Part shown: positions 1,027 through 43,395 of the stretch, piece after piece
Layout: every line of letters starts with the position of its first letter
Position numbering within the stretch: position 1 is the first letter of the stretch
NCBI GenBank assembly: GCA_002269645.1
Contig: NIVC01002509.1
Span: 1 to 64,000 of the forward strand
Direction of reading: 5' to 3'
Source: Macrostomum lignano
Taxonomy: Eukaryota
DNA: 64,000 bases
Made by a program: the position numbers and the translations under genes
The notes under the pieces: model-generated
What the model was told of the DNA's origin: nothing
The model's input: the letters and a program-made list of their open reading frames with translations, nothing else
The model's database searches: none

Positions 1027-1111
1027 GAATTTCAGGTACAGAAACATTCTTTGACAGCCGTTTGTGACCTTGTCTGTAGGCTCTGTAATCTTCTGTAGGC
1101 GATTTGCCAAC
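1027..1111 (-). CDS. RIMBP2: RIMBP downstream internal exon (VGKSPTEDYRAYRQGHKRLSKNVSVPEI); gene continues beyond window start
   Basis: TTATTCCAG acceptor with a long T tract, GTGAGT donor, 85 nt, phase 0/1; phase-compatible with the donor at 4619. Confidence 0.7.
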
Positions 1112-1292
1112 CTGGAATAAAAAAAAACAATTTCATATAATATCAAATAAATGAAATGAAATGAAATAACTAAATTAAACAGGACAAGAAAAGTAAATCA
1201 CTGAACAACACCAAGTAGAAAAACGAATTATAAGAATAAAAATGACTACAAGCCAACCAACGCCACACTGAAGCCGTCACCATGATAGAAAA

Positions 1293-1298
1293 TTTATT
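1293..1298 (-). terminator. Candidate AATAAA polyadenylation signal for the alternative terminal exon
   Basis: AATAAA ~55 nt downstream of TGA 1351, followed by T-rich sequence on the minus strand. Confidence 0.5.
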
Positions 1299-1350
1299 TA
1301 TCAAGTGCCATAAAACAGGTTCCTTGCCACCTCAACACGAAAGCTCCACC

Positions 1351-3648
1351 TCAGCTGGAGCCTTCGCCTCCTCCGGCGAGGTTCTTCGGGTCCAGCTTCT
1401 TGAACATGCTCGCCGTGCCCTCGCCGAACGCTTCAAATCTCTTCTTGGTGTCCCCACACGAAGGCGTCGAACTTTTTCTTAGTATCCTCGTTGAACGCTG
1501 CGAATTTCTTTTTATTTTCCTCGTTGAAGGCTTCGAAATTTTTTCGATTCTCCTCGTTCGCTTCGCGGATCTTTTCGCCCGTCTCATCGGCGATTTCCTC
1601 CACTTTTTCTTGGAATTCGTGGAAGCCTTTCTTTAGCCGGCCTAAGAAGCTCGAGTCCTCGGGATCGTTGGGATCGCCTTCGCACCTTCAACACCTTCGG
1701 CACCTTCAGCACCTTCGGCACCTTCAGCGCCTTCAGCAGCCGCAGCTTCAGCAGCCGCAGCTTCAGCAGCCGCAGCTTCAGCAGCCGCAGCTTCAGCAGC
1801 CGCAGCTTCAGCAGCCGCAGCTTCAGCAGCCGCAGCTTCAGCAGCCGCAGCTTCAGCAGCCGCAGCTTCAGCGGCCGCAGCTTCAGCAGCCACAGCTTCA
1901 GCAGCCGCAGCTTCAGCGGCCGCAGCTTCAGCAGCCACGGCAGCCTCCTCTTCAGGCGTTGGCAGGGGTTCACCCCTAGGGCCCCGCTGCCTACCCTCGG
2001 CCGCTTCGTCGACTGTCCGACCAAACTCGTCCAACAGTTCCCCGCCGGGTCCTCGGACAACCTGTCCGGTGGATTTGTCTTCGAGCACGCCGAACTCGTT
2101 GACCCGCCAGCCGCACTCGGAGGCCAGCAGATGACCGCTCGCCGGGTCGCGAGGCGCGCCGCACACCGGGCGACACCGAGCGTCGAAGTAGCGACCCTGG
2201 GCGTCTCTCAACGGCGCCCCGGTTGAGGCGTCGACCAGCAGGCCGAATTCGTTCTCGCGTCTTTCTGCCGAGTCAATAACGGCTTGACTGTCGGCGTCAA
2301 CAAGCTGCTGCTCGTCGGCCAGACAGACTTTCCGGCAAGCCAGCGGCCGACCTCCGGCGTCGAGCAGCTCACCGTTTGGCCCAAGCACGGGCTGCCCGGT
2401 GTCCGAGCTGGTCAGCACTCCGAGCTCGTTCGGCTCGGCCGGCGACACCAGACTGCCGTCCGGGCGGCGGACTCCGTGCACCGGACGACAATCGGAGTCG
2501 AAAAACTCGCCGGACGGACCTCGGACTGGCCGGCCGGACTCGTCCAGCAGGACGCCATTGTCGTTGACGCCGCCAGTTGGCAGCGGCGTGCCAGTCGACG
2601 TGTTCAACAGTCGGCCAGTGGACGCATCAAGCCGGGCCCGGCGACAATCGATTGGCCGGCCGGACGGGTCGAGCAGCTGGCCGTCCGGCCCCGGCTCGCT
2701 CAGCACGCCGTAGTAGTTCGGCTGCTGGGCCTCGTCGTCGACCAGCTGGCCGTTCGGCAGCCGCCGGCCGTAAACGACGGCGCCGTCGGGAGGGCCATAA
2801 AATTCTCCGTTTAGTCCGCGAAGCGGCAGCCCGCGCGAGTCGGCCAGCACGTTGAACTCGTTGGCCACGGCGTCGGCCACTTCGTCCGGCGAGTCAACAC
2901 GACGACAGGCGATTTCGGCTGCCGTTGCGTCCAATAGTTCGCGTCCGGTCGGCCCGGACAGTGGCCGGTTGTCTGTCCCGGACACTAACACGCCGAAGTA
3001 GTTGAGCTTTGGAGGCGGGTCGTCTGGCTTGCACGCCAGCAGACGGCCATCGTCGGGATGTCGGAGGCCGCCGAGAGCGGGCCGGCCGTCGGCACCAAAG
3101 AACTCGCCGCGGCTGCCTCGCAGCGGCACGGAGCCGACAGTCAGGATGCCGTGTGAGTTCGCCGCGGCCTCGGGAAACGCGTCCAACGGAGCAGCACCGT
3201 CCGGGACTGGCCGGCAGGCGATCGGCCGACCGTCCGAGTCGATTAGAGTGCCGTCTGGTCGGGTGAGAGCCAGGCCGGTGTCCAGATTAGCCAGGACGCC
3301 GAACCAGTTGACGGCGGGCGGCGGGTCGCCCAGCAGCTCGCCGTCGGGGCCGCGCGGCCCGTAGACCGGCTGGCCGTTGGAGGAGAAAAACTCGCCAGAC
3401 TGGCCTCGGATCGGGACGCCGTTTTCGTCGATTAGCACGCCGTTAGCGTTGACGCTTGTAGCGTCGCCGAAGGTCGTAGAATTATTAAATCCGTTAGACT
3501 CCGGTACAAGACGGCCGTCCGGGGTTCGAGTCGCGATTCGACAAAGTATGGGAGCGCCGTCTGGCGGAGATCGGAATTCGCCGCTCGGAGTTCGCAGCGG
3601 CTGACCGGTTGAGGGATCAACCAGGATGCCGAATTCGTTGGTTTGGGC
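1351..3648 (-). CDS. Large putative alternative terminal exon: unrecognised G/P/D-rich repeat domain, (AAAAE)n spacer, 11-mer amphipathic repeats, stop
   Basis: Phase-0 acceptor CCCCTTGTGTCAG at 3649; no Met codon in the 671-aa ORF apart from the TTG pseudo-start; GC-rich coding bias. Frame continues across 1-nt shifts at ~1681 and ~1456 to TGA at 1351. Confidence 0.75.
1690..1945 (-). repeat. Coding tandem repeat: 15-bp (AAAAE)n followed by 9-bp (GAE)n
   Basis: GGCTGCTGAAGCTGC-type unit repeated ~13-14 times inside the large exon. Confidence 0.92.
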
Positions 3649-3789
3649 CTGACACAAGGGGCGCGCATGCGGTAGTGGTGGTGGTGGTGGAAGGGTGCTG
3701 GTTTAATAGTGCAAGCTGTGCTTTGATTGACAGGCACGGAATAACGATGCTTCGCATATTTTTATGTGCAAAGGAGGATAAAAAGTTTA

Positions 3790-4350
3790 CAGGGCAGGGA
3801 TATAGGACAGGGAAACTATGGGTAGGAGTTGGGGTGGGTGTTTTATACACCCAGAGGAGGCTATAGTGTACATTAGGGCAGGAAAACTAAGGGTAGGAGT
3901 TGGGGTGGGTGTTTTATTCACCCAGAGGAGGCTATAGTGTACATTAGGGCAGGAAAACTAAGGGTAGGAGTTGGGGTGGGTGTTTTATTCACCCAGAGGA
4001 GGCTATAGTGTACATTAGGGCAGGCAAACTAAGGGTAGGAGTTTGGGTGGGTGTTTTATTCACCCAGAGGAGGCTATAGTGTACATTAGGGCAGGCAAAC
4101 TAAAGGTAGGAGTTGGGGTGGGTGTTTTATACACCCAGAGGAGGCTACAGTGTATATTAGGGCAGGAACAGCGAAGCTAGGAGTTGGGGTGGGTGTTTAA
4201 TACACTCAGAGGGAGGCTACAGAGTAAATTGGGGCAGGAAAATTGAGGGTAGAAGTTGGGGTGGGTGTTTTTTACACCCAGAGGAGGCTACAGTGTACAT
4301 TAGGGCAGGAAAACTGAGGGTAGGAGTTGGCTGGGTGTCTTATAGAACCT
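3790..4350. repeat. 71-bp minisatellite, ~8 copies
   Basis: CCCAGAGGAGGCTATAGTG… recurs at 3850, 3921, 3992 and onward. Confidence 0.9.
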
Positions 4351-4619
4351 GAGGAAGTTTTACCTACATGTAATAAGTAACGATATTGGCTAAACTCTAA
4401 AGAGTTAGCAGGTTAGTATATATACATAAAATGTTACTTATAGAAAACGTTTAAATAGCACAATCTACAACAAAATAAACGAGAGTAAGTTGATATCTTT
4501 TGTAAAGTTAAGACACAATCTATACAACATCAAAAGGCTACCACAGACACGTGAGAAAGGAAAAATCACTACGGATTCTAAGAAAGCTAAAATTGCTGCC
4601 AAATTGGTCTAGGCGTTAC

Positions 4620-5213
4620 CCTCGGATTGCGCGACGCGGACAACAGGTGCTGCCTGCGCAATCGATGGAATTTCGATGGACTAACGCTGCGACTTCGAAT
4701 CATTCGGTGGTCCATCAGGGCTGAGGTGTTCGAGGCGGCGGCGGCGGCGGCAGCTCCTCGCCTACTGGAGCGATGATGCTGGGAATGAGGCTGGCGCAGG
4801 CTGCCATGCTGAGGCCAGTCATCCTGCTGCTGCACCAGCTGCTGATGATGAGGCGGCAGCTGCCAGTCATCAAAGGAGGCCTGCATCTGCAGCTGCCTGT
4901 AACCGCCGCCGCCGCCAACAGGGTTGGCATTGTCGTACATGGAGGCGGGACCTGCAACGCCGTCGTTGGGATGACGAAGCAGGCCGCCCTGCTGCTGCTG
5001 CTGATGGTGATAAGCTTGATTATAACCGGCATGAACACCTGTTGGCGACCCGGTTAGATGAGGCGGCATACCAGCGGTTCTACTGAACCTGGACGACGGG
5101 CCAAGATTCAAAGGCCTACCAGACGTGGAAAGTCTTTGTTGTTGCTGCTGCTGTTGTTGTTGCAGGAGCAGAAGTTGCTGCTGTTGCTGCTTTCCGAAAG
5201 CCAGATGACGCTG
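4620..5213 (-). CDS. RIMBP2: RIMBP Gln/His-rich low-complexity exon
   Basis: Open frame QRHLAFGKQQQ…SASRNPR; tandem CAGCAG acceptor (start 5213 or 5210); GTAACG donor; phase 0/0. Confidence 0.75.
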
Positions 5214-5941: not shown

Positions 5942-6385
5942 ATCTTCTGGCCTAGGCAAATCGATAGACGAATTAGCGGCAGACAGAGTCAGCGAGCACG
6001 GCGGGTCCGAGTCTAAACTCTCCACAGTCTGACCATTGTGAGTACCGACTGTGCGCACGGTCAGGAAGGCGGTGTGAGGTGGCAGGGAGTTCTGGGCGAG
6101 CAGGCAGTGATCTGAGTACGCGTCCAAGCACTCCGTGACCCGGTGCCTGCCGTCAGCGTACACTGCGTAGCCGGTGACCCGAACACCGTTGGACACGCCG
6201 TCGGAGTTGGCAACGGTGACCGGTAGCCAGGTGACTAGCAGGGAATGGTCCTGAGGCCCGGGCTCGATTTGAACGTCCAGAGGAGCGTCGGGCAGGCCGC
6301 CGGGCGTGGTTCGAAACTCCAAGGTGGCGGTGAGGAGAGGCACGGAGGTGCCCGTAGTTTTCGGAGGCCTGGCCCGCACGCACAC
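5942..6385 (-). CDS. RIMBP2: RIMBP end of FN3-2 and FN3-3 (PDAPLDVQIEPGPQDHSLLVTWLPV…SNGVRVTGYAVYADG…ESLDS)
   Basis: Strong match to the RIMBP third FN3 pattern; (CT)n pyrimidine tract plus CAG acceptor; GTAAGT donor; 444 nt, phase 0/0. Confidence 0.95.
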
Positions 6386-16009: not shown

Positions 16010-16385
16010 AGCTTGTCTGACCTGTCAGTCTGTGTGACCTGTCTGTCTGTCAGCCTGTGTGGTCTGTCTGTCTGTCTGTCTGTCAGCCTGTGTGGTCTGT
16101 CTGTCTGTCTGTCAGCCTGTGTGGTCTGTCTGTCTGTCAGCCTGTGTGGTCTGTCTGTCTGTCAGCCTGTGTGGTCTGCCTGTCTGTCAGCCTGTGTGGT
16201 CTGTCTGTCTGTCTGTCTGTCTGTCAGCCTGTGTGATCTGTCTGTCTGTCTGTCAGCCTGTGTGGTCTGTCTCTGTCAGCCTGTGTGGTCTGCCTGTCTG
16301 TCAGCCTGTGTGGTCTGTCTGTCTGTCAGACTGTGTGGTCTGCCTGCCTGCCTGCCTGTCTGTCTGTCTGTCTGTCTTACTGACT
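16010..16385. repeat. (TCTG)n with interspersed TCAGCCTGTGTGG units
   Basis: Direct inspection. Confidence 0.92.
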
Positions 16386-16513
16386 CGGTGCAAAACTGTC
16401 CGAGAATTCCCGTTCAAGAAACTTGCATCAATACAAATATCGAACACATCACGCACAGGGCAGTTGCAGAGCAACTGTGCGAATGAAAACTTCAGACCCA
16501 GCAAGCAGCTTAC

Positions 16514-16727
16514 GAGGCTGGAAGCCGTTAGAGCTGGCCATGTAGTCGGGCCCCACAACTGTCGGTGTTGAGTTGTGCTGCGGCGGCTGCTGCTGCATCG
16601 GCGCAACGCCGAGGCCTCGAAGTTCGTCATATTTCTGCTTTTTCTTGGCCGCCTCAAGCTCCAGCATCAGCTCCTCGTGGCGCAGCGACTGCAGCTCGGC
16701 GCGCTTCTCCAATTCGCGCAGTTGCGT
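16514..16727 (-). CDS. RIMBP2: RIMBP coding exon (TQLRELEKRAELQSLRHEELMLELEAAKKK…)
   Basis: CTCATCAG acceptor, GTAAGC donor, 214 nt, phase 0/1. LRELEKRxELQxxRHEELxLELE resembles the RIMBP-family coiled coil that precedes SH3-1. Confidence 0.85.
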
Positions 16728-17430: not shown

Positions 17431-18254
17431 CAAAAAGAGGTGGGAAAGTAAGAGATTACATACTACGTAGAGATGATATTGTTAGATAATATACTCGTAG
17501 AATAGAGGTGGGATAATATGCGACTAGTTGAAGTCGATTACGAGACAAGATCTCTGTTTTAGTAAGAGACTGGATCGACTAATAATGGTATATCAGAGTG
17601 ATACTCGGACAGACTGGCCACACTAATAGCATATCCCAAATGCACTATTGACAGCCTCACGGCACACTGACACCGGATACCATGTATGACGGGAAATCCG
17701 TGCCTCAATCCATCTCACTCTCAGCTAGCAGCTGAACTCAAGCGAGCCAATCTTTTCAAACTAAACTCACCTTCAGCGAGTCCACAGTCTCTTCATTGGC
17801 CCTGGCCGCGTAATTATCCGGCCCCTATGGACAGATTGGCGATAATTATTATTAGTAGCATTATATATAGTAATACGAGCCTAGCAATAGTTTGCTAGTA
17901 TTAGAATAATCATGATAATGGTGTTTATCTAAACTATGTACACACACTAATACATAATTAATCAAACAGCAGGCCTGGCCTCCAATTCAAATCAACCCTT
18001 CGACTCTACACAGCAGCCGAAATCATAGCAGCTCTATTGAAACAGAACGGGCAGGGTCGCCACCGCCAGTTGTCACAAGCACAAAGAGAATGGAGCGACC
18101 GACGAGTCAATATTAGTTGTGGGGATTCGAGCTGAGGACGGATAAGTTGAGAACCAGGCGCTGCCTGCGGAGATAACAGAGATGCAGGCGAGGGAGCTGC
18201 AGGAAGTATGGAGAGAGATCGGGTAGAGTGGGGTGAGAATAACTAAAGAGCTTA

Positions 18255-18281
18255 GAGACAGACAGAAAAACAGACAGACAA

Positions 18282-18332
<51 letters not shown>

Positions 18333-18335
18333 CTA

Positions 18336-18368
<33 letters not shown>

Positions 18369-18371
18369 CTA

Positions 18372-18408
<37 letters not shown>

Positions 18409-18435
18409 CTAAGACAGACACTAAGAAAGACACTA

Positions 18436-18480
<45 letters not shown>

Positions 18481-18487
18481 GTCAGGC

Positions 18488-18562
<75 letters not shown>

Positions 18563-18575
18563 AAGACAGACACTA

Positions 18576-18632
<57 letters not shown>

Positions 18633-18635
18633 GCA
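18255..18635. repeat. (CAGA)n microsatellite
   Basis: Direct inspection. Confidence 0.95.
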
Positions 18636-19879
18636 GATGCAGTGAAGCAGTGTATGGAACAAAATAAGGTCATCGTGAACGGGGCAGCGAAATGAGCCGC
18701 GAGCAAGCAGAAGCCCCAGTTTACTCAGATGAGAAGCGGGCACGTGCGCAGATACAGCAGGCAGGCGCCCAGATCAAGTATGATGATACACAGCGCCCGC
18801 AAAAACCTACTCAAGCATCGATAGCTCCGTCTGACCAATTTTTTTTCTCTCTCTCTCTCGCCCCCCCCCACCCACACCCATTGCAGCCTCCCGGGACTGA
18901 AACTACATCAAGGACATTCGTTGTCGCATTCTAAATTATGCATAGAGAATCAACATCCAGTGGTGGCGGGGGGGGGGGTTGCTGGGCTAGCAACAGTGGC
19001 CGGCAAGGCCTGACAGCCAGACGGTTTAAACAGCCGATAGCTTAAGCCCAGGGAAACGAATGACCAGGAAGCACCGGGCGTAGAGAAAATTGAAAGATAA
19101 ATCTTCCAACAGCTAGGCGCAATGTCATGTGAGAACGAGAGGGATCGCGCGGCTCGCAGGGGACACAAGTCGGCATGGGGATCGAGGGAGTAAAGAGGGA
19201 AGAAAGCTGTGCAGAAATCGAATATCAGCCTCTAGCAAAGCGACATCTTGTCTTAGTGTTTCTGCATCTGTCCTTCCGTCTCCGGGAGGATATTTGGAAA
19301 AACTACAGTCACATGAATCTCCAGCTCTGAAGACTGGCCGACAGATTGCTTGGCTTACAACATTGGAGATGGCATATCTAGCATTGTGATCCGTCAGAAC
19401 TGGGAACCAGAGGGGTGACAGTCGGACAGAACTGGACAAGAAGAGCATTCATGTAGTTGATGGGGCATGATGGAGAAAGAGGATCTGATTTACAGACCTG
19501 AGCTTCTGAAAGACTCAAGGTGAGGGAGTGAGACAGACGAGAAGGGAAGAGAGCAGCTGAGAGCAGTGTTTACTGCCTGGCCTGAGCTCAGAGACTGCGC
19601 ACGCTGCTCAGATGGCCAAAAAGGAAGGCAGCGTGACAGGTGACTCGGGGTCAGTGTGGCATTCTAAATAGCAAGGCCAGACATTTTGACTTTCTGAGTT
19701 CCGACAGTCAGATCTAATTGTAAGACAGTTCAGCTTTTCAGAAAATATTATTATCATAAATTTTAAAACTACTTTCTCACAATCAGAAGATAGAAGCTCT
19801 AAAAAACTATGTAGCCGTAGCTGTGGGAAATATATTCGGAAACGGCATGCCCAACAACTAAGGAAATACTTCATCCTTT

Positions 19880-20280
19880 GCCTCTCCTCCCTCCTGCCCT
19901 TCCCTGCCTCTCCTCCTGCCCCTCCCTGCCTCTCCCTGCCCCTCCCTGCCTCTCCCTGCCTCCCCTCCTGCCCCTCCCTGCCTCTCCCTGCCTCTCCCTG
20001 CCCCTCCCTGCCTCCCCTCCTGCCCCTCCTCCTGCCCCTCCCTGCCTCCCCTCCTGCCCCTCCCTGCCCCTCCCTGCCTCTCCCTGCCTCCCCTCCTTGC
20101 CTCCCCTCCTGCCCCTCCCTGCCCCTCCCTGCCTCCCCTCCTGCCCCTCCCTGCCCCTCCCTGCCTCCCCTCCTGCCCCTCCCTGCCTCCCCTCCTGCCC
20201 CTCCCTGCCCCTCCCTGCCTCCCCCTCCTGCCCCTCCCTGCCCCTCCCTGCCTCCCCCTCCTGCCCCTCTCTCCCTACCT
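19880..20280. repeat. C-rich 12-16-bp repeat (CCCCTCCCTGCCT); G-rich on the minus strand
   Basis: Direct inspection. Confidence 0.92.
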
Positions 20281-21090
20281 TCCTCTCTGCTCTTCCCGCT
20301 TTTTCTGTCCCCCATTCGTCCATGCCTGCTGTATATTGTACATAAATCTCACCCTTCATCTCCTCCTATGCCTCTTCTCACCCCTTTCTCCTCTCCTTCC
20401 TCAATCATTCCTTTATCCTCACCACCACCTGTCCTCTTAGCCTTTGTTTGCTCTCCTGTCTCTATCCACACCAGGCGCGACCTCCCGCAGAGCCCAATTA
20501 GCATAATGATGAAGGGTGGCTCTCAGCTGCCGCAGTAGCCGTAAAAAAGCAACTGTCTTTTTAAAAAATTAAAAGAAAAGTTTTTGCTCCCTGGAGTGTG
20601 AAAATTTGGGCGATAGTGAAAAACGTTAAAGCACTTTCCGTTTCCCCAGGGTCTCAGCTCAGGCTAAGTAAAGCAACTTAAACTTATTATATAAAAAGAA
20701 TCGCACATTCATTTTCGTAATGGCAGTTCACCATCTCTCACTAACAGACCTTCAGCCAATTTGAAATCAAAGCCGTATGTAAAAAGCATGAGGAGTTCAT
20801 AATAAATTAGGAAATAGCCATCACCCAAACTTAACAGCAAAAGGCTTAAGAAAATCTTTTGGCTATAATAATTATTTCTAACCTCTCTTTACTCTTTGCG
20901 AACCTGCTAGTCATGCCTTAATCGTGATACTGATCGACATAATTACCAAAATTTTAGGGGCTTAGAATCGAAATCTCAAACTGCAAAGAAGATTTTAATT
21001 TAGAATTTTTCTCTTTTCAATATCTAATGAGACAGAAATTTCTTTCTGTTCCTCTAGAAGAAGCGCGTCTTGAGCAGAAACGGCGGCTAC

Positions 21091-23900: not shown

Positions 23901-24194
23901 CATGCGGGGATAATTAAAGCGGATTCCTTCAGAAGTCAAGATTATGGGAAAAAATATTAAAGAAAATGTACAAAAAACAGCAAATCAATAGAGAAGACAA
24001 ACCAAATCAGTCTGGGCGGTGTGCTCTTCTTGAAGCTGAGATTTTAGCTGCTCATTCTCGCCAGACAAAGCCGCGAGACTGCTTTCCTGAAGAAGAGAAG
24101 GGAAGCGAGGGGAGCACTGGTTACACAAGGACATTTAATGTCTGCAGAGTGCAGATGGATGTAATAAACAGCATGGGATGATGGGGCCGCGCAG

Positions 24195-24196
24195 AA

Positions 24197-24237
<41 letters not shown>

Positions 24238-24308
24238 CAAAGACAGACAGACAGACAGACAGACACTAAGACAGACAGTCAGACAGACAGACAGACAGAC
24301 AGACACTA

Positions 24309-24352
<44 letters not shown>

Positions 24353-24355
24353 GAA
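24195..24355. repeat. (CAGA)n microsatellite
   Basis: Direct inspection. Confidence 0.95.
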
Positions 24356-24669
24356 CAGACGCGGAGAGCCAGGCAGAGACAGTGAGCTCTCAAAAGCCAC
24401 CGTCTCGAGTTTAAAGAACCCGGCGCTCTGCTGCCCTGCAGCTGCGGTTGAGCTGAGGAAATCGCATTAACCCACTAGCAAACAGGCTGTCTCTTCCCCA
24501 CTTCCTCTGCTTTTGTAGCTCCCACAGTGCACTTAGTTTAATAGAACAGAAGTTATATGATAGTTTAGTCTGATAGATAAAGTACGCAGTAATATTTCTC
24601 TGATAAATGCAATAAATGATATAACTAGTGTGGTATATAAAAGCCAATATACAGTAGTACATGTTATCT

Positions 24670-25962: not shown

Positions 25963-27089
25963 CTTATGAGTTTTTTAGGGCAACAGAGAATAGCGCTTTG
26001 ATAACAGAATGAAACAGTTAAACTACAATTGTTTCCTGTTGTTAGGACGCAAATTCTATACTGGATTAAATAATAAAATGCACACGCACTAAGCTCAGAG
26101 CAGCTAAGAGCTCAGAGGGGGTGGGTACTTGGATTGGGAGTAAATTGGATAGGGAAAGAATGGGAAGAGAGGAATGATGGGGTTGCTGCTCTGCGATGGG
26201 GAGACTGAGAATACGCAGCAAGCCAAGCCTCCTTTCGCGTACGCAAGCAACTGTACTGCAAGGTGGCTCAAAAGCAGGCTGCTCTCTCAGTTGCAGACTC
26301 AGGCCGACTGTACATTCATTCTCCGCACCCACCTCAGCGAGAGGGGAAGAGAGGGGGGAGAGGAGCAGGGAAGGGAGAGTCTGGAGAGCCCGATCAATCA
26401 ATACATTTGGTATAGAAAGTGGGGGAGAGAGGAGAGGATAGGGCAAGGCGATTTGAGAAGGCGGTTCTAGAATACTCGTAGAACTCTGAGCTCACTCCCT
26501 CCCTCCCTGCTTGGCCCCTAGCCAAAAGGCTCAGCCAAGCGGTTAGTGGCTTCCCAACCGGCAGCAGCAGCAGGCCGTGTGGAGTCTCAAGGCGAGCTTT
26601 TCTTGGCCGGGGTAAAAGTTGGGAATTAGCACGGGGGGGGCTGTAGGAGGATGGGGTGAAGAAAGTTCACACTACAGGAGGCGCACGAGCATCTCGGAGA
26701 CTAGGATGGGGAGGCCGGAGAGGCTGAGGGGAGAGAAAAAAGGGGGGAGGCCGAAAACGGTGGCAGACAGAGATATTCCCTAACCATAATCCCCAATGCG
26801 GAGCGCTCTCCCTATTCCCCCTGGGAGCAGAGTTGTGTATAGAAATGAATGGGAAGGCGATTCCAAGCCTTTGCAGATGCCCAGATTAGCTTTAACCCGG
26901 CCTGAAATCCCTCTTCAAACACATCTCGAAATCCCCTTAGATAGCGCCACAGAGAAGGGTATTGGTTTCCAAATTTTCAAATCATTTAAATAGAAATTAA
27001 AACAAATATAAAATCCGATTACGCGTGTACATATTTAGCAGACTTAAGCTAATGACTGTTTGAGTTTGAGATCAACAAATAAAAAGCAA

Positions 27090-28260
27090 ATGAATCTCAA
27101 AATGAAAATGGCACTCCCCAATATCTAGTGGCAAATTTATCTCAAAATGAAAATGGCACTCGCCAATATCTAGTGGCAAATGTACCTCAAAATGAAAATG
27201 GCACTCGCCAATATCTAGTAGCAAATGTACCTCAAAATGAAAATGGCACTCGCCATTATCTAGTGGCAAATGTATTTCAAAATGAAAATGGCACTCGCCA
27301 ATATCTAGTGGCAAATGTATCTCAAAATGAAAATGGCACTGCCAGTGTCTGCCACTATCTAGTGACAAATCTATCTCAAAATGAAAATGGCACTGCCAGT
27401 GTCTGCCACTATTTAGTGGCAAATGTATTTCAAAATGAAAATGGCACTCGCCAATATCTAGTGGCAAATGTATCTCAAAATGAAAATGGCACTGCCAGTG
27501 TCTGCCACTATCTAGTGACAAATCTATCTTAAAATGAAAATGGCACTGCCAGTGTCTGCCACTATCTAGTGGCAAATGTATCTCAAAATGAAAATGGCAC
27601 TCGCCAATATCTAGTGGCAAATGTATCTCAAAATGAAAATGGCACTGCCAGTGTCTGCCACTATCTAGTGGCAAATGTATCTCAAAATGAAAATGGCACT
27701 CGCCAATATCTAGTGGCAAATTTATCTCAAAACGAAAATGGCACTCGCCAGTATCTAGTGGCAAATGTATCTCAAAATGAAAATGGCACTCGCCCATATC
27801 TAGTGGCAAATTTATCTCAAAATGAAAATGGCACTCGCCAATATCTAGTGGCAAATTTATCTCAAAACGAAAATGGCACTCGCCAGTATCTAGTGGCAAA
27901 TGTATCTCAAAATGAAAATGGCACTCGCCAATAGCTAGTGGCAAATGTATCTCAAAATGAAAATGGCACTCGCCAATATCTAGTGGCAAATGTATCTCAA
28001 AATGAAAATGGCACTCGCCATTATCTAGTGGCAAATGTATCTCAAAATGAAAATGGCACTCGCCATTATCTAGTGGCAAATGTATCTCAAAATGAAAATG
28101 GCACTCGCCAATATCTAGTGGCAAATGTATCTCAAAATGAAAATGGCACTCGCCAATATCTAGTGGCAAATGTATCTTAAAATGAAAATGGCACTGCCAG
28201 TGTCTGCCACTATCTAGTGGCAAATGAGTCTCAAATGGCACTGCCACTATCTAGTGACAA
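27090..28260. repeat. 45/54-bp minisatellite (TATCTAGTGGCAAATGTATCTCAAAATGAAAATGGCACTCGCCAA)
   Basis: 15-aa periodic ORFs on both strands; the 54-bp variant carries GCCAGTGTCT. Confidence 0.95.
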
Positions 28261-35803: not shown

Positions 35804-36505
35804 CAGCGCGTTCAGCGTCCTCTGCGCCGATTCCCATTCGCCGTCGCCATCTTCGTCGGCAGCGTCCACCGCGGCAGCGAGATGCCGACGCAGGGCACCC
35901 AGCTCGCCGGCCAGCGCCGCCTCGCGACCCTCCAGGCTCTGCCCGGCGCCCAGCCGGTCTCTCAGCTCGCGATTGGCGTACCTGGCCACTTTCAGCTCTT
36001 TCTGCAGCCGGTTGACCAGCTCGGCGTTGCTGCCGGCCTTCTGCAGCAGCTGCTGCTGCTGGCGGAGCTCAGCCGACTCGGCCTGGGCAGCCCGCCTGAG
36101 CGCCCGCTCGGAGTCCAGCCGGGCCATCAGGCGGTCCAGAACTCGGCGCACCTCGGCCGGATTCGCAACCCGATCCGGCGAAGCTCGCACCGCCGCCGCT
36201 GCGGCTGCCGTTGTGGTCGAAGACGCCGCCGAATAGGCCGACCGTTGGCTTCGCTCCGACGGCGAGCGTCGCTGCTGCTGCTGCTGATTTTGGCTTCGCC
36301 GACGCGCCGACGAAGCCGATGGGCGTCTTCGCGAGTCCTTCTCGGAGTCGGCGTCTTCGTCTTCGACATCGTCTGCGTTGTCGACATCCTCGAGTTCAGT
36401 GTCGCTGTCTCGGTGGTCTGTGCGATCATTCGACCGGCTGGATGGGCGGCCGGCTCGCCGATGCGGCTGCTGCTGCAGAGGCTGGCGATAAGCTCCGAGC
36501 TCCAT
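35804..36505 (-). CDS. RIMBP2: RIM-binding protein, first recognisable coding exon (low-complexity N-terminus plus coiled coil)
   Basis: ATG at 36505 opens MELGAYRQ...QRTLNAL; donor GTGAGA at 35803; 702 nt, phase 0, matching the downstream exon chain. A further upstream exon cannot be excluded. Confidence 0.75.
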
Positions 36506-38639
36506 CGTGCTGAGTCTGCAGCTGAGGTTTGTTTTAAATATAAATATACATATACATGCATATATGATTGGCCCCTATAATTAATATGAATGAATATGAT
36601 TAAAACAAAAAAATTATTCCTTAGATGACAAGTAGAGTAGAGTAGAGTAGAGTAGAGTTCCGCAATAACCAAAATTTTTGCATATCTATATCCATATCTG
36701 TATCTCGGATGCTTGAGTCCCCAGCCCAAAAAGGGACTTTCTTTAGAGCTCCCAATGGCTCCCATCGCATTGACAATAAAATTATTCAACTTAACTTCAG
36801 TCTCCACCATCCCTATCATACGACGTGCACATGGTGTCAAAAATCTTGTTTGCTTGAGTCTACAACCCTAGGGACTTAAATTCATTCATTTCCACTGCTG
36901 TCTACCACCCCTATAAAGTCAAGGGCTCCAATGGTCTTCCTAAAAACCTCTATATCTGTAATTTTATGTTAGCTATAGAGGAACTCAAAGTGATAACCTA
37001 ATTAACTATTAAATGGAGAACTTAAAGGATCTCTGTAAATTAACTGTCAACTTTCAAAAAATACAAAAATAAATTTAAAATATTTGAGAGAAGCTTTAAA
37101 GAGTAATATATTTCCCAGTACTATGAAAACTAACTATAATATATATTGATATTTATAAAAATAAAAAATTAGTATTACAATATTTACAACTTACTAGCTA
37201 GTTAATTATATGAAGGCTCCAATATATTGCCATACAATAGGACAAATTTTTCATAAAATTATCATTGGTAGAATAATGTTGGCACTTTTTAAGTTGTTCA
37301 GTATAGCTATCTAGTATATAGCAATGAAAAAAAACAGACTAAAAGTAAGCATGTCACAAGCGTCCAAACAAGCACTTGATTTAATTTGAAATCAGTCAAA
37401 TAGGTAAGGAGATTATAAATATAAAATTATCCTTCCCATCTTACCCATCTATAATTTGATATTCATTTAGAAATGCAAACTTAATGTCATAGGGGTATTC
37501 CCGTACGGTACAAAATCCTACCGCTGTAACCAAAGTTGTCGCAGGGCTTACTTCTGTCCTCCAACTATCCCACTATTGCCACCAAGTTGTTACAGGGGTG
37601 ATTCTTCCTGTTTGCCAACTAAAGTTATCCTGATTATACTTGTTTCTACTCCCTAACTATTTCTTAGAATTTCATTTAAATATTTCTGGGTAGCGTTCTT
37701 AGTATCGTTTCTGGTAGCTTATGGCCAGCTTTCTGGTAGCGTTCTGGTAGCTTATGGCCTGAGCGGTCTAGTACTGGTATATATGTATTAGTGAATAGTC
37801 CTAATCGGGCGTTCACCGAGACTAGAGGGTCACGGCGCCTCTCTTAGTATATCTCCAGGAATTAGTCCCAATTCCCTTCTCTTAGCAAATTTCTTAGAAT
37901 CGTTTCACAGGTTTTGCAAATGAATAAGTCGCTATTTAGCTCAAAGACTTTGAAATGGTTTAGATTGAACTGCTTATTCTGTTCGCAATTATTTGCTCAC
38001 AGGTAAAAGACAGTTGGAGTATATTTGTCGCAAAACCGCTCCTATATATAGTGATTTCCCCCCCCATACGATTAAAACAAAAAAAATAATTCTCCAATTT
38101 ATTTCGCGCATTAAAACAAACTATTATTTGGCGTTAGATTCGAATATACCGTTATTACATTGAAAGAACATTCGAGTATACTATTATAAAGGCATAGCAC
38201 TAGTACATTAAAATTTAGTACATGGAAGGCAAATCTAAGAAATCAATCCCAAATGATAGAACATACTATTCGGCTATACTATAATGGTGTGGAAGGGATG
38301 GTAGGGATTGATTGGAAGATGAATGTTTTCACTTTCAATGTGAGGGAGCTCTTAAGTCCCTAGGGTTGGGGACTAAAGCAACAGAGATATTTGATACCAC
38401 ATACACATTGTGGTTGGCATAATAGGGGACAAAGTTAAAATGAATAAGAATGAAACAAATGAAAAAGCCACAGCCACCTAGCATTTGCCACATTCAAAGA
38501 AGGTTAGACTAAAAACAATTGAGGCTTTTGCTGCCTGATCTTCTTAAGGAACCAACTGACAAGCAGGCTATTGATCTCATAGAAGATCTTAGTAAGCATT
38601 GAAGATTTTGTTATATTAGCTACTTAAACAATACAAAAA

Positions 38640-40257: not shown

Positions 40258-40844
40258 TCACTTGCCATGATGCCTGACAGCTGATCGTCTTCGTTCTGAG
40301 ATTCTTCGTCCCGCTTCCGCTGCTGCACAAGACCGGCCTATTTCTTGCACTTCTTGGCTTGGCTGCGAACGAGACGGGGGCGGCGGGAGTGGACAGGGCA
40401 CAGCCCGATTGGCCAGACGGTCGGCATGCTCGTTGCCTGGGATGCCGCAGTGGCCGGGCAACAACTAGACGATGATGCCCGCATTAGGGGTTAGGCGACT
40501 CTCGGCTGGCGAGATCCCGGCTGGCACTAGCGTGCACCAGTTCCAGGGCGGCGACTTCCTCGTCGAAACTGGATATGATGGGCCTCGGTATGAATAACCA
40601 GGTTGGCTGGGTCGCCCTCCGTGACCACGAAGGCGTGGCGCATTGGCGATCGTGCCCCGGGTCACGGAACCGTCGGTGTGGACTGTCCAGGCTTGTGGGG
40701 ACAGCGAGGCAACGAGCTCCTGGATTCGGTCAGTGGCGGCGCTACGGATGAGGTCCAGTTCGATGTGGGGGACGTCGATATGTTGAGGCAAAATCTGCGT
40801 AGCCTCCCGGGAGGCTGGGAGGAGGGTAGGTTCGCTTGGCGGAA
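40258..40844 (-). mobile_element. Second non-LTR RNase H fragment
   Basis: AWTVHTDGSV and LPGHCGIPGNEHADRLAN motifs in adjacent broken ORFs. Confidence 0.75.
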
Positions 40845-41380
40845 ACAACAACGACAACAGAATACGCGATTAGCGACACTAGGCGCGCTTCAAGGCCAGG
40901 TCGCAAATGAACGCCACGCTATCGGCCGGATCCGGGGCGCCGGCGTCAGCCAGCAGGCAGTCGACGAAACGCCGAGTGCGCGCCTGCCCCCGCCTGTAGG
41001 GTACCTGCATTGTTAGCAGCAGCACCTCCTGCACCGGCTCTGGGCAGTACGACTCGGCGTGAATGATGTGGCCTGCCAGCTGGAGTCGCCGACGGCGCAA
41101 CAGCTCGCTTGGATGGACCAGGCCGGCGCGGTGATACAAAGCTGCGTTGGTCACTCGCTCGTAGCCGATTTTGAAGGCGGCGCGCAGCAAGCCAGCGTGC
41201 GCCGCATTAACTTGTTACTCAAGCGACTCCGTCAGCGTCCAGGTCTCGGTGTTGTGCAGCGCGCAGGACGGTCTCGATCACCGCCTGGAAAAACGCCGCC
41301 CTCTGGCGGTCAGGTAAGGCCTCGGACTGCAGGACTGCCCTCACAGAACGAAAGGCAGACCAGGCAAGCCCGTGGCGACG
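40845..41380 (-). mobile_element. RTE-clade LINE 3' fragment (RT thumb and C-terminus)
   Basis: AWSAF…FFQAVIETVL…TETWTLT…LLRAAFKI…RRRRLQLAGHI; internal stop and frameshift; short (GTT)-like tail near 40860-40845. Confidence 0.8.
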
Positions 41381-41879
41381 CAGTTCTTCCAATTCACCAG
41401 CCTGAGGTCAGTGGCAGGTCACTGTCAGTTTCTTGCAATCTGCTTCTGTGCCTCTGCATTTACCAGCTGCAAAAACTGGCGATTATCCCATCGATGCGCA
41501 AAATCACAAAGAAGTCAACGGCCTCAGAATCCTCTGAAATTTCAATCCACGGGTTGACACCAGGAGTTGTCGTGAGATGCCGGCGCAGAAAGTCAGACAT
41601 CGCGGCCACTGTTGACTTCTTTCCACTCTTCCACTTTTGTTTGTTCTTCCTGTACTTCGGCTTGTAGGTCTTCTTCTGCGTTCAACGCGTCAGCGGTGAC
41701 AAATGATTCATTGCCATCATCATTGCACTGTCAGCTGTCTTGGATAGCTCACTCTCCGACTCGCTTATGTCCAATCCAAGACGATGGAGAGCTTCAGCAG
41801 CAGCTGTACGCCGTCGGACTTGCTGCTGAGCCATGGTCAGTTGCTACGGCTCCTTATTGCTACGGCTCCTGCTTCGGCT

Positions 41880-43395
41880 GCTGCTGCTGCTGCGGCTGCT
41901 GCTGTTGTTGTTGTTGATGCCAACCATGCCTTTCATCAGCGGCTAGGGGCCTCTTCCCTGGCCCCCACGGCGGGTGTCCTCTCCACCACTCCCAGTACTT
42001 CAGAGCTTCTTCCGGTTGTTCACAAACCGCCCGAAAGCCACTGCAACACCACGCCCTCCTCCTTCCATCTGTCGCCGGGCAGTCCCAGACATGCTGCATT
42101 GTTTCGTCTACCATGCCGCAACACCGGCATAAGCTTTTGTCCTGGAGCCCTATCCTCTTCCTGTAGGCCGCCAATTCGATCGAGTGGCCTGTGCGCATCC
42201 TTCTGAAGCTCACTTCCTCCCTCCTGCTACTGAACCACAGGTCCCTATTCTTTCTTACCACACGTGCTCTCGTACACCCTCATCATTCTCTCGTGCCTCC
42301 AGCCACTTATCCGCGTACCGTACCGCCTCGCTCTTTTCGCCACCGTGCTAGCCAGCACTCTAGCTCCGTCATGCTCAACCTCTCTTACCGCTTCGCCAGC
42401 CATCTCCTCCGCCTCCTCATTTCCTCCGATTCCGCAGTGACTAGGGATCCAGAGCAGGATCAACAGCTTACCCGCCTGGTCCAGCTTGCCGAACTCTTAC
42501 CTGGCCAGCTTGGCCAGCGGGTTTCTGCCAACCTTGCTGACCACCTGGAGGCCACTCTTGCGATCTGTACATAGCACTGCTTTCATCCAACTAATGCCGC
42601 GTTTCTGTCAGCCATCTCGTCGCAACCCATATAGCGTGAGCTCCGCTTGCGTCGACGATGCGATCCTGCCTCCCGACACTCTACTAGACGCGTCTCCAGG
42701 TTCCGCTCTCCATGTCGCCACTCATGACAACCATTCTGCCACCTCCGGCTCCAATAGTTGTTTACTGAACCGTCCGTAAAAAGGACATCCGGACCTTCGC
42801 TGGCTTCCTCGCTACAAGCGGTGGCTAGTTTTCTGCAATCCTCTTCCTCGCGGCCGGTGGGAACCTTCTGCTTGGATGGACACACCCCTCCACGTCGTTC
42901 CTGGTCTTTCTTTTTCACGTCCTCGAACCTTGGTATATCCAGCTGCCACTGATCCTCAGCAGCCCCCAAAGCCCTCCCGGTTCCAGCACGTGCCTATTCT
43001 GCAGTCTTCCTTTCCCCTCTGTCTTCCGCCAATCTTCTGATCGAGCCATCTCTCACCTGAGCATTCTATCCAGCCTCTGGACAGCTCTCCAGCTCGCCAA
43101 CCCACAGAGCTCCTCGGTGCCGCGCTCTCTTCCCTGACTCCCTCGATCAATCGGTATCGTGCCATCAGGCCTCCATACTCTCGTAGCTTTTCTATGGAGC
43201 ACTTCCAGCTTAGCTCAGCTCTTCTCTCCAAGCCACGGCATCCAGGCAGTCGATCCATACATAATTTTACTTTCGACAATCGTCTCTCACGTTTGCCTAA
43301 GAAGCTTGTTTTGCCAGCCCGTCGCTGCCCGACAGATTCCTGAGCAGCTGGACGCGTCCCCTTACAGGCCTTGCAGATCTCTTGCACGTGCTTAA
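41880..43395 (-). mobile_element. 5'-truncated, degenerate non-LTR retrotransposon with RNase H and C-terminal Cys-His zinc finger
   Basis: RNase H motifs VLFTDGSV and LWIPSHCGIGGNEEAE; RTGH…CRCCG…ETMQHVWDCP; ends in a (CAA/CAG)n tail; several frameshifts. Confidence 0.85.

What the first reader, a model, noticed from the sequence alone, without database searches (positions are those of the whole stretch)
1027..4620. Alternative last-exon switch that would swap RIMBP's C-terminal SH3 pair for a novel tail
Seen: the phase-0 donor at 4619 has two phase-0 acceptors downstream. One, at 3649, opens the giant exon ending in TGA (1351) plus AATAAA (1298-1293). The other, at 1112, opens an ordinary 85-nt exon with a GTGAGT donor, so the gene continues. 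The giant ORF has no ATG, so it is unlikely to be a standalone gene. Established: RIMBP SH3-2/3 bind the PxxP motifs of RIM and Ca2+ channels. Inference: intronic polyadenylation yields an isoform that lacks these SH3s and carries a different anchoring tail.
Basis: partly seen in the sequence, partly recalled or inferred. Interest (0 to 1): 0.72.

Follow-up and report, generated by a model that had tools for sequence, protein, structure and literature searches.

The report
ATG-less orphan gene inside RIM-BP intron
A 2-kb protein-coding block with no start codon of its own sits inside an intron of a flatworm-like RIM-binding-protein gene; it may be an alternative end of that synaptic protein, but in flatworms it can equally be a separate nested gene that gets its start codon from the trans-spliced leader, and DNA alone cannot tell which.

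Summary
On the minus strand there is a phase-0 donor after 4620, phase-0 acceptors at 3650-3649 and 1113-1112, an 85-nt exon (1111-1027) with a GTGAGT donor, AATAAA at 1298-1293, and no ATG in the big ORF. One detail is wrong. As assembled, the ORF stops at TAG 1644-1642, and TGA 1353-1351 is reached only across two compensating 1-nt frame breaks.

The ORF is genuinely coding:
- It has 686 open codons; the longest run in 500 shuffles was 370.
- It shows the same GC-by-codon-position signature as the host exons.
- It holds 11 diverged ~50-aa repeats whose conserved residues use varied synonymous codons.

It has no real homologue among about 15 billion proteins. The host gene is RIM-BP, and its FN3 exons are closest to Macrostomum lignano. 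Flatworm spliced leaders end in AUG, and their acceptors are often shared with cis-splicing. So "no ATG, hence not a standalone gene" does not hold: SL…AUG|GCC CAA would read M-A-Q-T-N-E-F-G.

My estimates are nested SL-trans-spliced gene about 0.45, alternative last exon of RIM-BP about 0.30, and hidden start or decaying relic about 0.2. RNA reads would settle it. Interest is modest.

The parts
5942..6385 (-). RIM-BP exon encoding the third FN3/Ig domain (host gene)
   Evidence: Pfam PF25523 Ig_RIMBP2, E=3.7e-30. tblastn with M. lignano P0001 gives 60% identity over 143 aa.
4620..5213 (-). RIM-BP Gln/His-rich linker exon. It is phase 0 at both ends and its donor is the weak AGG|GTAACG (GT 4619-4618).
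   Evidence: Read from the sequence and by anchored translation. It has no homology support. Its composition resembles the FN3-to-SH3-2 linkers of other RIM-BPs.
3649..4619 (-). 971-nt interval between the RIM-BP donor and the big exon's acceptor: an intron if cis-spliced, or promoter plus outron if trans-spliced.
   Evidence: It holds a 71-nt tandem repeat at 3803-4355, 7.8 copies. No ATG-initiated first exon with a usable phase-0 donor is present. A TATA-like CATAAAAATA lies about 110 nt upstream of the acceptor. AATAAA occurs on the gene strand at 4060, 3989 and 3918.
3649..3650 (-). Acceptor AG (gcgccccttgtgtcAG|GCC), phase 0
   Evidence: It is the only in-phase AG in the 18 open codons before the exon. 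TGTCAG does not fit the M. lignano trans-acceptor motif [T/C]TNCAG.
1975..3648 (-). Repeat region of the big ORF. It holds 11 units of 42-63 aa in alternating types A and B, which pair into five ~100-aa super-repeats plus one unpaired A unit at the C-terminal end.
   Evidence: Conserved residues use varied synonymous codons. The GC-by-codon-position signature matches the host exons. AF2 on one super-repeat gives pLDDT 75.7 and a mostly beta model.
1645..1974 (-). Ala/Glu low-complexity region, (AAEAA)n then (GAE)n, which ends the ORF as assembled
   Evidence: Tandem repeats of 15 nt (1731-1936) and 9 nt (1677-1738); translation.
1642..1644 (-). First in-frame stop codon, TAG, of the ORF as assembled
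1351..1681 (-). Coding-looking tail of 11-residue amphipathic repeats, broken by two 1-nt indels (about 1682/1681 and the GGGG run 1455-1452). It ends at TGA 1353-1351.
   Evidence: Three-frame translation. Weak Pfam match to the Apolipoprotein A1/A4/E domain: E=0.0022, 18 bits, against a cutoff of 90.
1293..1298 (-). AATAAA poly(A) signal candidate. A second one lies at 1516-1511, inside the tail.
1027..1111 (-). 85-nt candidate next RIM-BP exon, with a strong U-rich acceptor and a GTGAGT donor
   Evidence: It is AT-rich, with GC3 0.32 against 0.6-0.78 in the other exons, and has no homology support.

Best explanation
The block 3648-~1275 (minus strand) is a real, intronless, protein-coding terminal exon lying in the intron between the RIM-BP linker exon and the next RIM-BP exon.

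It encodes an orphan protein in three parts:
- about 560 aa of beta-rich ~50-aa repeats with the pattern N-x-F-G-V-L-x-D-x-x-T-G-x-P-x-R-G-x-x-G-E-F-F-x-x-x-G-R-P-V;
- an Ala/Glu low-complexity stretch;
- an apolipoprotein-like amphipathic tail, which is out of frame in this assembly.

Most likely it is a separate nested gene. Its pre-mRNA comes either from a promoter in the 971-nt upstream interval or from the host transcript. That pre-mRNA is trans-spliced at AG 3650-3649 to the flatworm spliced leader. The leader's 3'-terminal AUG lands in frame (…UUGCAUG|GCC CAA ACC, reading M-A-Q-T-N-E-F-G) and supplies the missing start codon. The 3' end forms after AATAAA 1298-1293, or after 1516-1511.

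RIM-BP pre-mRNA mostly splices over the block, from 4620 to the much stronger acceptor at 1112. Some cis-splicing of 4620 to 3648 is expected as a by-product or minor isoform, because flatworm acceptors are often shared between cis- and trans-splicing.

Shown here: coding status, anatomy, orphan status and host gene identity. Inferred: flatworm origin, SL usage and which junction dominates.
For: Coding status:
- 686 open codons, against a shuffle maximum of 370.
- GC by codon position is [.735.534.74], matching RIM-BP exons at [.635.527.723] and [.768.516.74].
- Identity between repeat units is 0.58 at codon positions 1+2 and 0.44 at position 3, and conserved Gly/Pro/Arg use several synonymous codons.

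No cis source of a start codon:
- 0 Met in 668 codons.
- No ATG-initiated exon with a phase-0 GTRAG donor in 4619-3650.

Standalone look:
- A single 2.0-2.3-kb intronless ORF with its own acceptor and poly(A) hexamer.
- No relative among 1.84 billion representatives apart from motif-level bacterial repeat proteins.
- No such repeats in the M. lignano RIM-BP model, which runs from FN3-3 through a linker into SH3-2.

Taxon: the FN3 exons are closest to M. lignano.

Literature:
- The Macrostomum SL ends in ATG (PMC8629364; PMC10468722).
- All reported flatworm SLs end in ATG (PMC12582326).
- The SL AUG is in frame in 28% of S. mansoni trans-spliced mRNAs and is required by more than 40 cDNAs (PMC9851317).
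- 20-30% of Macrostomum genes are trans-spliced.
Against: - No RNA evidence was reachable.
- No SL RNA gene lies in the window.
- The species is not in the protein collections, and its ALIX is only 33-44% identical to anything found. Flatworm origin therefore rests on one gene.
- The acceptor TGTCAG does not fit the M. lignano trans-acceptor motif [T/C]TNCAG, which is found at 44% of sites. Its pyrimidine tract is C-rich rather than U-rich.
- The upstream RIM-BP donor is phase-compatible, which the cis-splice reading requires and this reading treats as coincidence (about 1 in 3).
- A same-strand acceptor inside a host intron should also be used in cis.
- In M. lignano, genes without conservation to human, a class this orphan would fall into, are less often trans-spliced than conserved ones.
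Confidence: 0.45

Rival explanations
1. One reading: the block is an alternative last exon of RIM-BP. Cis-splicing 4620->3648 plus intronic polyadenylation would give an isoform that keeps SH3-1 and the three FN3 domains, lacks SH3-2/3, and ends in the orphan repeat domain.
For: - The donor (4619) and the acceptor (3649) are both phase 0, so the fusion is in frame.
- The ORF has no start codon of its own and no internal Met.
- There is no alternative first exon in the interval.
- The proximal acceptor is weaker than the distal one at 1112, the usual layout for a regulated terminal exon.
- Codon signature is the same as in the RIM-BP exons.
- SH3-2/3 are indeed absent from the window.
- Cis use of a functional acceptor downstream of a donor is expected in any case (PMC5832876).
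Against: - The 'no ATG' argument is neutralised by the SL AUG in flatworms.
- The donor GTAACG is weak.
- A 668-codon orphan repeat ORF with its own 3' end looks like an inserted intronless gene rather than a grown exon.
- The M. lignano RIM-BP model shows no such domain.
- The 'anchoring tail' is out of frame as assembled.
- There are no junction reads.
Confidence: 0.3
2. The block is a standalone gene whose start is hidden, or a recently disabled relic. Either ATG 3757 is the true start and a 1-nt assembly or haplotype indel in 3757-3649 breaks the frame, or an unseen upstream exon exists, or the gene is decaying, having lost its start and having a frameshifted tail.
For: - ATG 3757-3755 opens a 36-codon ORF that ends just inside the big ORF, one base out of frame.
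- The tail shows two 1-nt frame breaks within 230 nt, so indels, real or artefactual, do occur at this locus.
- The gene is an orphan.
Against: - The 2-kb repeat region has no frameshift or stop, while both breaks lie in the last 300 nt. If indels were spread evenly, that would have P of about 0.02.
- ALIX and RIM-BP exons show no frameshifts.
- The stretch 3757-3650 has weaker coding composition, with GC3 0.58.
- The repeats show purifying selection.
Confidence: 0.18
3. The ORF is not a gene at all: a GC-rich diverged minisatellite that happens to stay open.
For: - The region is internally repetitive, and GC-rich sequence has few stops.
- The opposite strand also carries ORFs of up to 176 aa.
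- There is no homologue.
Against: - 686 open codons exceed all 500 shuffles.
- The frame-specific GC1/GC2/GC3 signature equals that of known exons.
- The units are too diverged for TRF to detect, yet they keep amino-acid motifs through synonymous changes.
- AF2 gives a confident small beta domain for a super-repeat.
Confidence: 0.05

Closest known systems
Flatworm mRNAs that take their initiator Met from the 3'-terminal AUG of the spliced leader (Cheng et al. 2006 JBC 281:733; 'slORFs', PMC9851317)
   Same: An ORF with no AUG of its own begins directly at a splice acceptor in phase 0, so SL…AUG|GCC is in frame. The host lineage appears to be a flatworm close to Macrostomum, whose SL ends in ATG.
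   Different: No SL-bearing read or SL gene was seen. The acceptor lies inside another gene's intron, downstream of a compatible cis donor. It does not fit the commonest M. lignano trans-acceptor motif.
Alternative last exons produced by intronic polyadenylation (skipped terminal exons), which swap C-terminal domains
   Same: A proximal acceptor, a long ORF and a poly(A) hexamer lie inside an intron, with a stronger distal acceptor for the canonical exon. The junction is in frame.
   Different: The exon is unusually long (668-765 codons) and encodes a self-contained orphan repeat protein. No isoform evidence exists, and no RIM-BP isoform of this kind turned up among the homologues retrieved here.
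Same-strand nested genes in introns, and internal SL acceptor sites shared with cis-splicing in Schistosoma mansoni (PMC5832876) and other parasitic flatworms (PMC12582326)
   Same: An acceptor inside a host intron could serve both the host donor and the SL. An intronic promoter is possible.
   Different: In the described cases the downstream exons usually belong to the same gene. Here the exon encodes an unrelated protein and terminates the transcript.
RIM-binding protein (RIM-BP/RIMBP2/Drosophila Rbp), the host gene
   Same: The window holds a coiled-coil N-terminal region, SH3-1, three FN3/Ig_RIMBP2 domains and a Gln-rich linker in the canonical order. In Drosophila RIM-BP, SH3-II/III bind PxxP motifs of Cac, RIM, Unc13A and Aplip1 (PMC7337501).
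   Different: SH3-2/3 are not in the window, and the orphan ORF has no counterpart in the other RIM-BPs retrieved.
Bacterial repeat proteins with G-x-L-[LV]-D-x-x-G-x-P-L motifs (TrbI/VirB10-type DotG/IcmE-like proteins P0009 and P0010; actinobacterial-looking P0011)
   Same: These are the only database matches (E 1e-8 to 7e-6). They share a roughly 15-residue Gly/Asp/Pro hairpin-like motif.
   Different: The similarity is at motif level only, inflated by repetition. There is no shared domain or architecture, and the codon signature here is that of the host genome.

Membership tests
RIM-binding protein gene (host) | Three central FN3 / Ig_RIMBP2 domains | tested here: met
   PF25523 scores E=3.7e-30 at 6385-5942 and E=3.9e-5 at 8123-7815. 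M. lignano P0001 aligns to 8216-7848, 6857-6672 and 6388-5990.
RIM-binding protein gene (host) | SH3-1 upstream of the FN3 domains | tested here: met
   Weak tblastn hits of SH3 segments at 12139-12053 and 10323-10240, E 0.001-0.01. The P0001 SH3-1 end aligns to 10323-10252.
RIM-binding protein gene (host) | C-terminal SH3-2/SH3-3 tandem | not testable with these tools
   No SH3 lies downstream of FN3-3 in the window. The remaining 1026 nt are mostly a 24-nt tandem repeat. The domains must lie beyond the window start.
Alternative last exon of RIM-BP | Acceptor in phase with the upstream donor, and an ORF open from the acceptor | tested here: met
   Donor 4619 and acceptor 3649 are both phase 0. 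The ORF is open from 3648 to TAG 1644-1642.
Alternative last exon of RIM-BP | Poly(A) signal downstream of the stop and upstream of the next exon | tested here: inconclusive
   AATAAA is present at 1516-1511 and 1298-1293, but the hexamer is common (94 in the window) and also occurs in the upstream intron repeats.
Alternative last exon of RIM-BP | Transcripts joining 4620 to 3648 | not testable with these tools
   No transcript data for this species. No protein like the ORF was found among about 15 billion proteins, including those from Logan assemblies.
SL trans-spliced gene using the SL 3' AUG (flatworm) | The organism has a spliced leader ending in AUG | tested here: inconclusive
   The window groups with M. 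lignano on RIM-BP FN3-3. The Macrostomum SL ends in ATG. However, there is no SL gene in the window, and ALIX gives no close relative.
SL trans-spliced gene using the SL 3' AUG (flatworm) | An AG acceptor directly before the ORF in phase 0, with no AUG of its own in frame | tested here: met
   tgtgtcAG|GCC CAA gives AUG-GCC-CAA in frame. There are 0 in-frame ATGs in 668 codons.
SL trans-spliced gene using the SL 3' AUG (flatworm) | Trans-acceptor motif [T/C]TNCAG (M. lignano) | tested here: not met
   The site reads TGTCAG. The motif is present at only 9551 of 21754 M. lignano sites, so it is not obligatory.
SL trans-spliced gene using the SL 3' AUG (flatworm) | SL-bearing reads at the acceptor | not testable with these tools
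   No RNA data were reachable.
Apolipoprotein A1/A4/E domain (tail) | A Pfam PF01442 match above the gathering score | tested here: not met
   E=0.0022 and 18.2 bits, against a cutoff of 90. The match is a resemblance of 11-mer amphipathic repeats only.
Any described protein family or fold (repeat region) | A significant sequence or structure match | tested here: not met
   Pfam found nothing. Sequence search of PDB chains gave a best E of 0.0041, judged spurious. The HMMER search of 1.84 billion representatives gave a best E of 1.3e-8, to bacterial repeat proteins. Foldseek against the PDB gave a best E of 1.2 and TM no higher than 0.32.

The most novel reading that the evidence does not exclude
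The exon is dual-use. The same acceptor (3649) would be cis-spliced to the RIM-BP donor in some transcripts, giving an SH3-2/3-less RIM-BP fused to the repeat domain. In others it would be trans-spliced to the SL, whose AUG starts the free-standing repeat protein. One intronic cassette would then couple the isoform choice of an active-zone scaffold to the expression of a lineage-specific protein. This could work as an operon-like unit, with a short RIM-BP isoform that ends in the retained intron (stop at 4587, AATAAA in the 71-nt repeats) about 250 nt upstream of the trans-splice site.
Probability: 0.15. Interest if true: 0.6.

Novelty: new member of a known kind. Interest (0 to 1): 0.3.

Why it matters
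If the cis-splice reading holds, this flatworm would make a RIM-BP that cannot bind RIM or Ca2+ channels through SH3-2/3 and instead carries a new beta-repeat domain. That would be a natural dominant-negative or re-targeted active-zone scaffold.

If the trans-splice reading holds, the locus is an ordinary nested orphan gene. It would still be a clear example of why ATG-less ORFs in flatworm genomes must not be assumed to be exons of the surrounding gene, because the spliced leader supplies the AUG. Gene predictors that ignore this will fuse or drop such genes.

In either case the roughly 100-aa beta-rich super-repeat has no detectable relative or known fold.

Tried and rejected
- **Homology of the big ORF.** The word-indexed search found nothing, but the Ala/Glu tail probably swamped its candidate list. 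The full HMMER scan of the repeat region gave only four weak bacterial repeat proteins, which I read as motif-level resemblance rather than homology or gene transfer. Pfam, PDB sequence search and Foldseek were all negative.
- **Structure.** Single-sequence AF2 on 558 aa was unusable, with pLDDT 43. Using the five internal super-repeats as the alignment gave pLDDT 75.7 but no fold match.
- **A cis first exon inside 4619-3650.** None is credible.
- **A 44-nt mini-intron to repair the first tail frameshift.** A GTGCGA…TTAG intron would restore the frame. I rejected it because the donor is poor, the removed piece looks coding, and the second break cannot be explained the same way.
- **SL RNA gene, Rfam families and tRNAs in the window.** None found.
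- **Species identification.** ALIX gave only 33-44% identity to molluscs, vertebrates and a cestode. The M. lignano genomic locus is not on record, so the orthologous intron could not be inspected.
- **Paralogues of the ORF in the window.** None.
- **Phase statistics to separate the cis and trans readings.** The two likelihood ratios cancel. A phase-0 donor is needed for cis, and a phase-0 acceptor is needed for the SL AUG.


Full report
**What is in the sequence**

The gene runs on the minus strand. The exon at 5213-4620 ends …CGC AAT CCG AGG|GTAACG, so its last base is 4620, the GT is 4619-4618, and the phase is 0.

Downstream, tgtgtcAG|GCC CAA ACC has its AG at 3650-3649 and opens a long ORF in phase 0. 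Further on, ttttttttttattccAG|GTT GGC has its AG at 1113-1112 and opens an 85-nt exon (1111-1027) that ends in a consensus GTGAGT donor. AATAAA lies at 1298-1293.

One point does not match. In the assembly the ORF that starts at 3648 stops at TAG 1644-1642, with TAA following at 1635-1633. It does not run to TGA 1353-1351. Coding-looking sequence does continue past the TAG, but in another frame:
- The shifted frame reads …EGDPNDPEDSSFLGRLKKGFHEFQEKVEEIADETGEKIREANEENRKNFEAFNEENKKKFAAFNEDTKKKFDAFV.
- The sequence returns to frame 0 (DTKKRFEAFGEGTASMFKKLDPKNLAGGGEGSS*) only after the GGGG run at 1455-1452.

There are therefore two compensating 1-nt breaks. One base is missing at about 1682/1681, at the end of the 9-nt GAAGGTGCN array. 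One base is extra in the G-run. The ALIX and RIM-BP exons in the same window show no frameshifts. These breaks are therefore either errors specific to a repetitive stretch or real mutations that truncate the protein before its tail.

**Is it more than chance?**

- The open run of 686 codons exceeds every one of 500 dinucleotide-preserving shuffles, which had a mean of 184 and a maximum of 370.
- GC by codon position is [0.735, 0.534, 0.74]. RIM-BP exons give [0.635, 0.527, 0.723] and [0.768, 0.516, 0.74], and ALIX shows the same pattern.
- The ORF consists of 11 units of 42-63 aa that alternate between two types:
  - Type A: …G-x-L-L-D-x-x-G-R-P-I-x-C-R
  - Type B: …R-G-x-x-G-E-F-F-x-x-x-G-R-P-V-x-G-x-R-x-P-D-G-x-L
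- The units pair into five ~100-aa super-repeats that are 39-45% identical, leaving the last A unit unpaired.
- Conserved Gly, Pro, Arg and Leu positions use several synonymous codons. Identity between units is 0.58 at codon positions 1+2 but 0.44 at position 3. This is the signature of selection on the protein.

The ORF is therefore a genuine coding sequence.

- It has no Met in 668 residues. Composition predicts 4.7 (P = 0.009), and the other exons would predict 16.
- The 85-nt exon has rare, strong signals. Only 12 pairs of a strong acceptor with a GTRAGT donor occur in 128 kb, and only 3 are open. However, it is AT-rich (GC3 0.32) and has no homology support.
- Two features are not beyond chance. 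One is the single in-phase AG within 18 open codons. The other is the AATAAA hexamer, which has 94 copies in the window, including three in the intron repeats at 4060, 3989 and 3918 and one inside the tail at 1516-1511.

**The host gene and the organism**

The upstream exons are RIM-BP.
- Pfam Ig_RIMBP2 scores E=3.7e-30 at 6385-5942.
- The M. lignano protein P0001 aligns to FN3-1 (8216-7848), FN3-2 (6857-6672), FN3-3 (6388-5990) and the end of SH3-1 (10323-10252).
- Only one SH3 domain is detectable in the window, at 12139-12053 plus 10323-10240. None lies downstream of FN3-3.
- This fits SH3-2/3 lying beyond position 1. Positions 36-947 are a 24-nt tandem repeat.
- In Drosophila RIM-BP, the C-terminal SH3-II/III domains bind PxxP ligands in Cac, RIM, Unc13A and Aplip1 (PMC7337501).

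Over 107 FN3-3 columns shared by all hits, the window is 65-68% identical to M. lignano and 44-53% identical to the crustacean, beetle and unnamed sequences. The window and M. lignano also share exclusive motifs, such as RHRVTECLDAxSDHCLLAxxSLPP.

The species itself is absent from the protein collections. Its ALIX/PDCD6IP gene, on the plus strand from 43985 to beyond 64000, is only 33-44% identical to anything found. I take a Macrostomum-like flatworm as probable, not proven.

The 35-nt M. lignano spliced leader is CGGTCTCTTACTGCGAAGACTCAATTTATTGCATG, and it ends in ATG (PMC8629364). Further points from the literature:
- All reported flatworm SLs end in ATG (PMC12582326).
- The SL AUG is in frame in 28% of S. 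mansoni trans-spliced mRNAs, and more than 40 cDNAs need it to start translation (Cheng et al. 2006, as cited in PMC9851317).
- 20-30% of Macrostomum genes are trans-spliced.

Trans-splicing at 3649 would give …AUG|GCC CAA ACC AAC GAA UUC GGC, which reads M-A-Q-T-N-E-F-G. An ATG-less ORF that begins exactly at a phase-0 acceptor is what such a gene looks like in genomic DNA.

The interval 4619-3650 holds no credible ATG-bearing first exon. The start codon must therefore come either from RIM-BP by cis-splicing or from the SL by trans-splicing. The phase evidence cancels. Cis-splicing requires a phase-0 donor, which is a coincidence under the trans reading. The SL AUG requires a phase-0 acceptor, which is one of three options under the cis reading.

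In S. mansoni, 43% of SL acceptor sites coincide with cis acceptors, mostly with the cis donor still present (PMC5832876). Parasitic flatworms as a group show 'extensive sharing' of acceptors between trans- and cis-splicing. Both products may therefore exist at this locus.

**What tips the balance**

I favour a separate nested gene (about 0.45) over an alternative last exon (about 0.30) for four reasons:
- The block is a self-contained, intronless ORF of 2.0-2.3 kb with its own 3' signals. In the related Macrostomum genomes, mean exon length is 0.7-0.9 kb.
- It is an orphan with no relation to RIM-BP.
- The M. lignano RIM-BP model passes from FN3-3 through a linker into SH3-2 with no such domain.
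- The proximal acceptor has a C-rich tract with 12 of 18 pyrimidines. It is clearly weaker than the U-rich acceptor at 1112, so most host transcripts should skip it.

Several points count against this view:
- TGTCAG does not fit the commonest M. lignano trans-acceptor motif, [T/C]TNCAG, although only 44% of sites carry that motif.
- In M. lignano, genes without conservation to human, a class this orphan would fall into, are less often trans-spliced than conserved ones.
- A cis donor sits 971 nt upstream.
- Flatworm origin rests on one gene.

A TATA-like CATAAAAATA about 110 nt upstream of the acceptor would suit a short outron. This is only a resemblance.

A third possibility (about 0.18) is a hidden or lost start. 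ATG 3757 opens a 36-codon frame that is one base out of register with the ORF, and this locus already shows two 1-nt breaks.

**The protein**

The repeat region has no Pfam family and no credible PDB sequence match. Scored against 1.84 billion representatives, it produced four hits, with a best E of 1.3e-8.
- Two hits are TrbI/VirB10-type (DotG/IcmE-like) bacterial repeat proteins.
- One has an actinobacterial look, with GPNGELLGPDGQPL repeats.
- I read these as resemblance in a roughly 15-residue hairpin motif, not as homology.

AF2 on the whole region failed, with pLDDT 43. With the five internal super-repeats used as an alignment, one 102-aa super-repeat gave pLDDT 75.7 and pTM 0.64, and the model is mostly beta. 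Foldseek found nothing significant in the PDB (best E 1.2).

The tail consists of 11-residue amphipathic repeats with a sub-threshold resemblance to the apolipoprotein A1/A4/E domain (18 bits against a cutoff of 90).

**Verdict**

The interpretation cannot be decided from DNA. The finding is a new member of known kinds: either a nested gene initiated from the SL AUG, or an alternative terminal exon. Interest is modest, at 0.3. SL-aware read mapping or a two-primer RT-PCR would settle the question.

Noticed in passing
window 1351-1700 (-): Two compensating 1-nt frame breaks lie 230 nt apart in the tail of the big ORF: a missing base at about 1682/1681 in the 9-nt repeat array and an extra G in the GGGG run at 1455-1452. 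They could be assembly errors or a recent truncation. Other exons in the window are clean.
   Followed up: partly
window 3803-4355 and 36-947: Large minisatellites sit in the RIM-BP introns on either side of the locus: 71 nt x 7.8 copies, and 24 nt x 38 copies. Three copies of the 71-nt unit carry AATAAA on the gene strand.
   Followed up: partly
window 4587-4619 (-): The linker-exon ORF reads through its weak GTAACG donor for 11 more codons to TAG 4587. Intron retention would therefore give a short RIM-BP ending …RNPRVTPRPIWQQF.
   Followed up: no
window 43985-64000 (+): An ALIX/PDCD6IP (BRO1 plus V domain) gene lies head-to-head with RIM-BP, with introns of 68-80 nt around 50.5 kb. It is only 33-44% identical to any database protein.
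   Followed up: partly
window 40465-43387 (-): Broken ORFs of a non-LTR retrotransposon lie between the two gene starts. They give a weak zf-RVT match (E=0.008) and contain RNase-H-like and C-terminal zinc-knuckle-like motifs.
   Followed up: partly
window 36505-36530 (-): The RIM-BP start codon (ATG 36505) is preceded by ctgcag|actcagcacgATG. CTGCAG fits the M. lignano trans-splice acceptor motif [T/C]TNCAG, so RIM-BP itself may be SL trans-spliced.
   Followed up: no
window 27072-28247, 19608-20359, 16013-16571, 18073-18706, 24121-24393: Further long tandem arrays in RIM-BP introns create spurious ORFs of up to 391 aa. They include a ~45-nt unit giving an HFHFEIHLPLDIGEC repeat, a GA-rich array and (GTCT)n arrays.
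   Followed up: no
window 1027-1111 (-): The 85-nt exon has excellent splice signals but intron-like composition (GC 43%, GC3 0.32) and an internal CCTACAGA repeat. Its status as a coding RIM-BP exon is unverified.
   Followed up: partly
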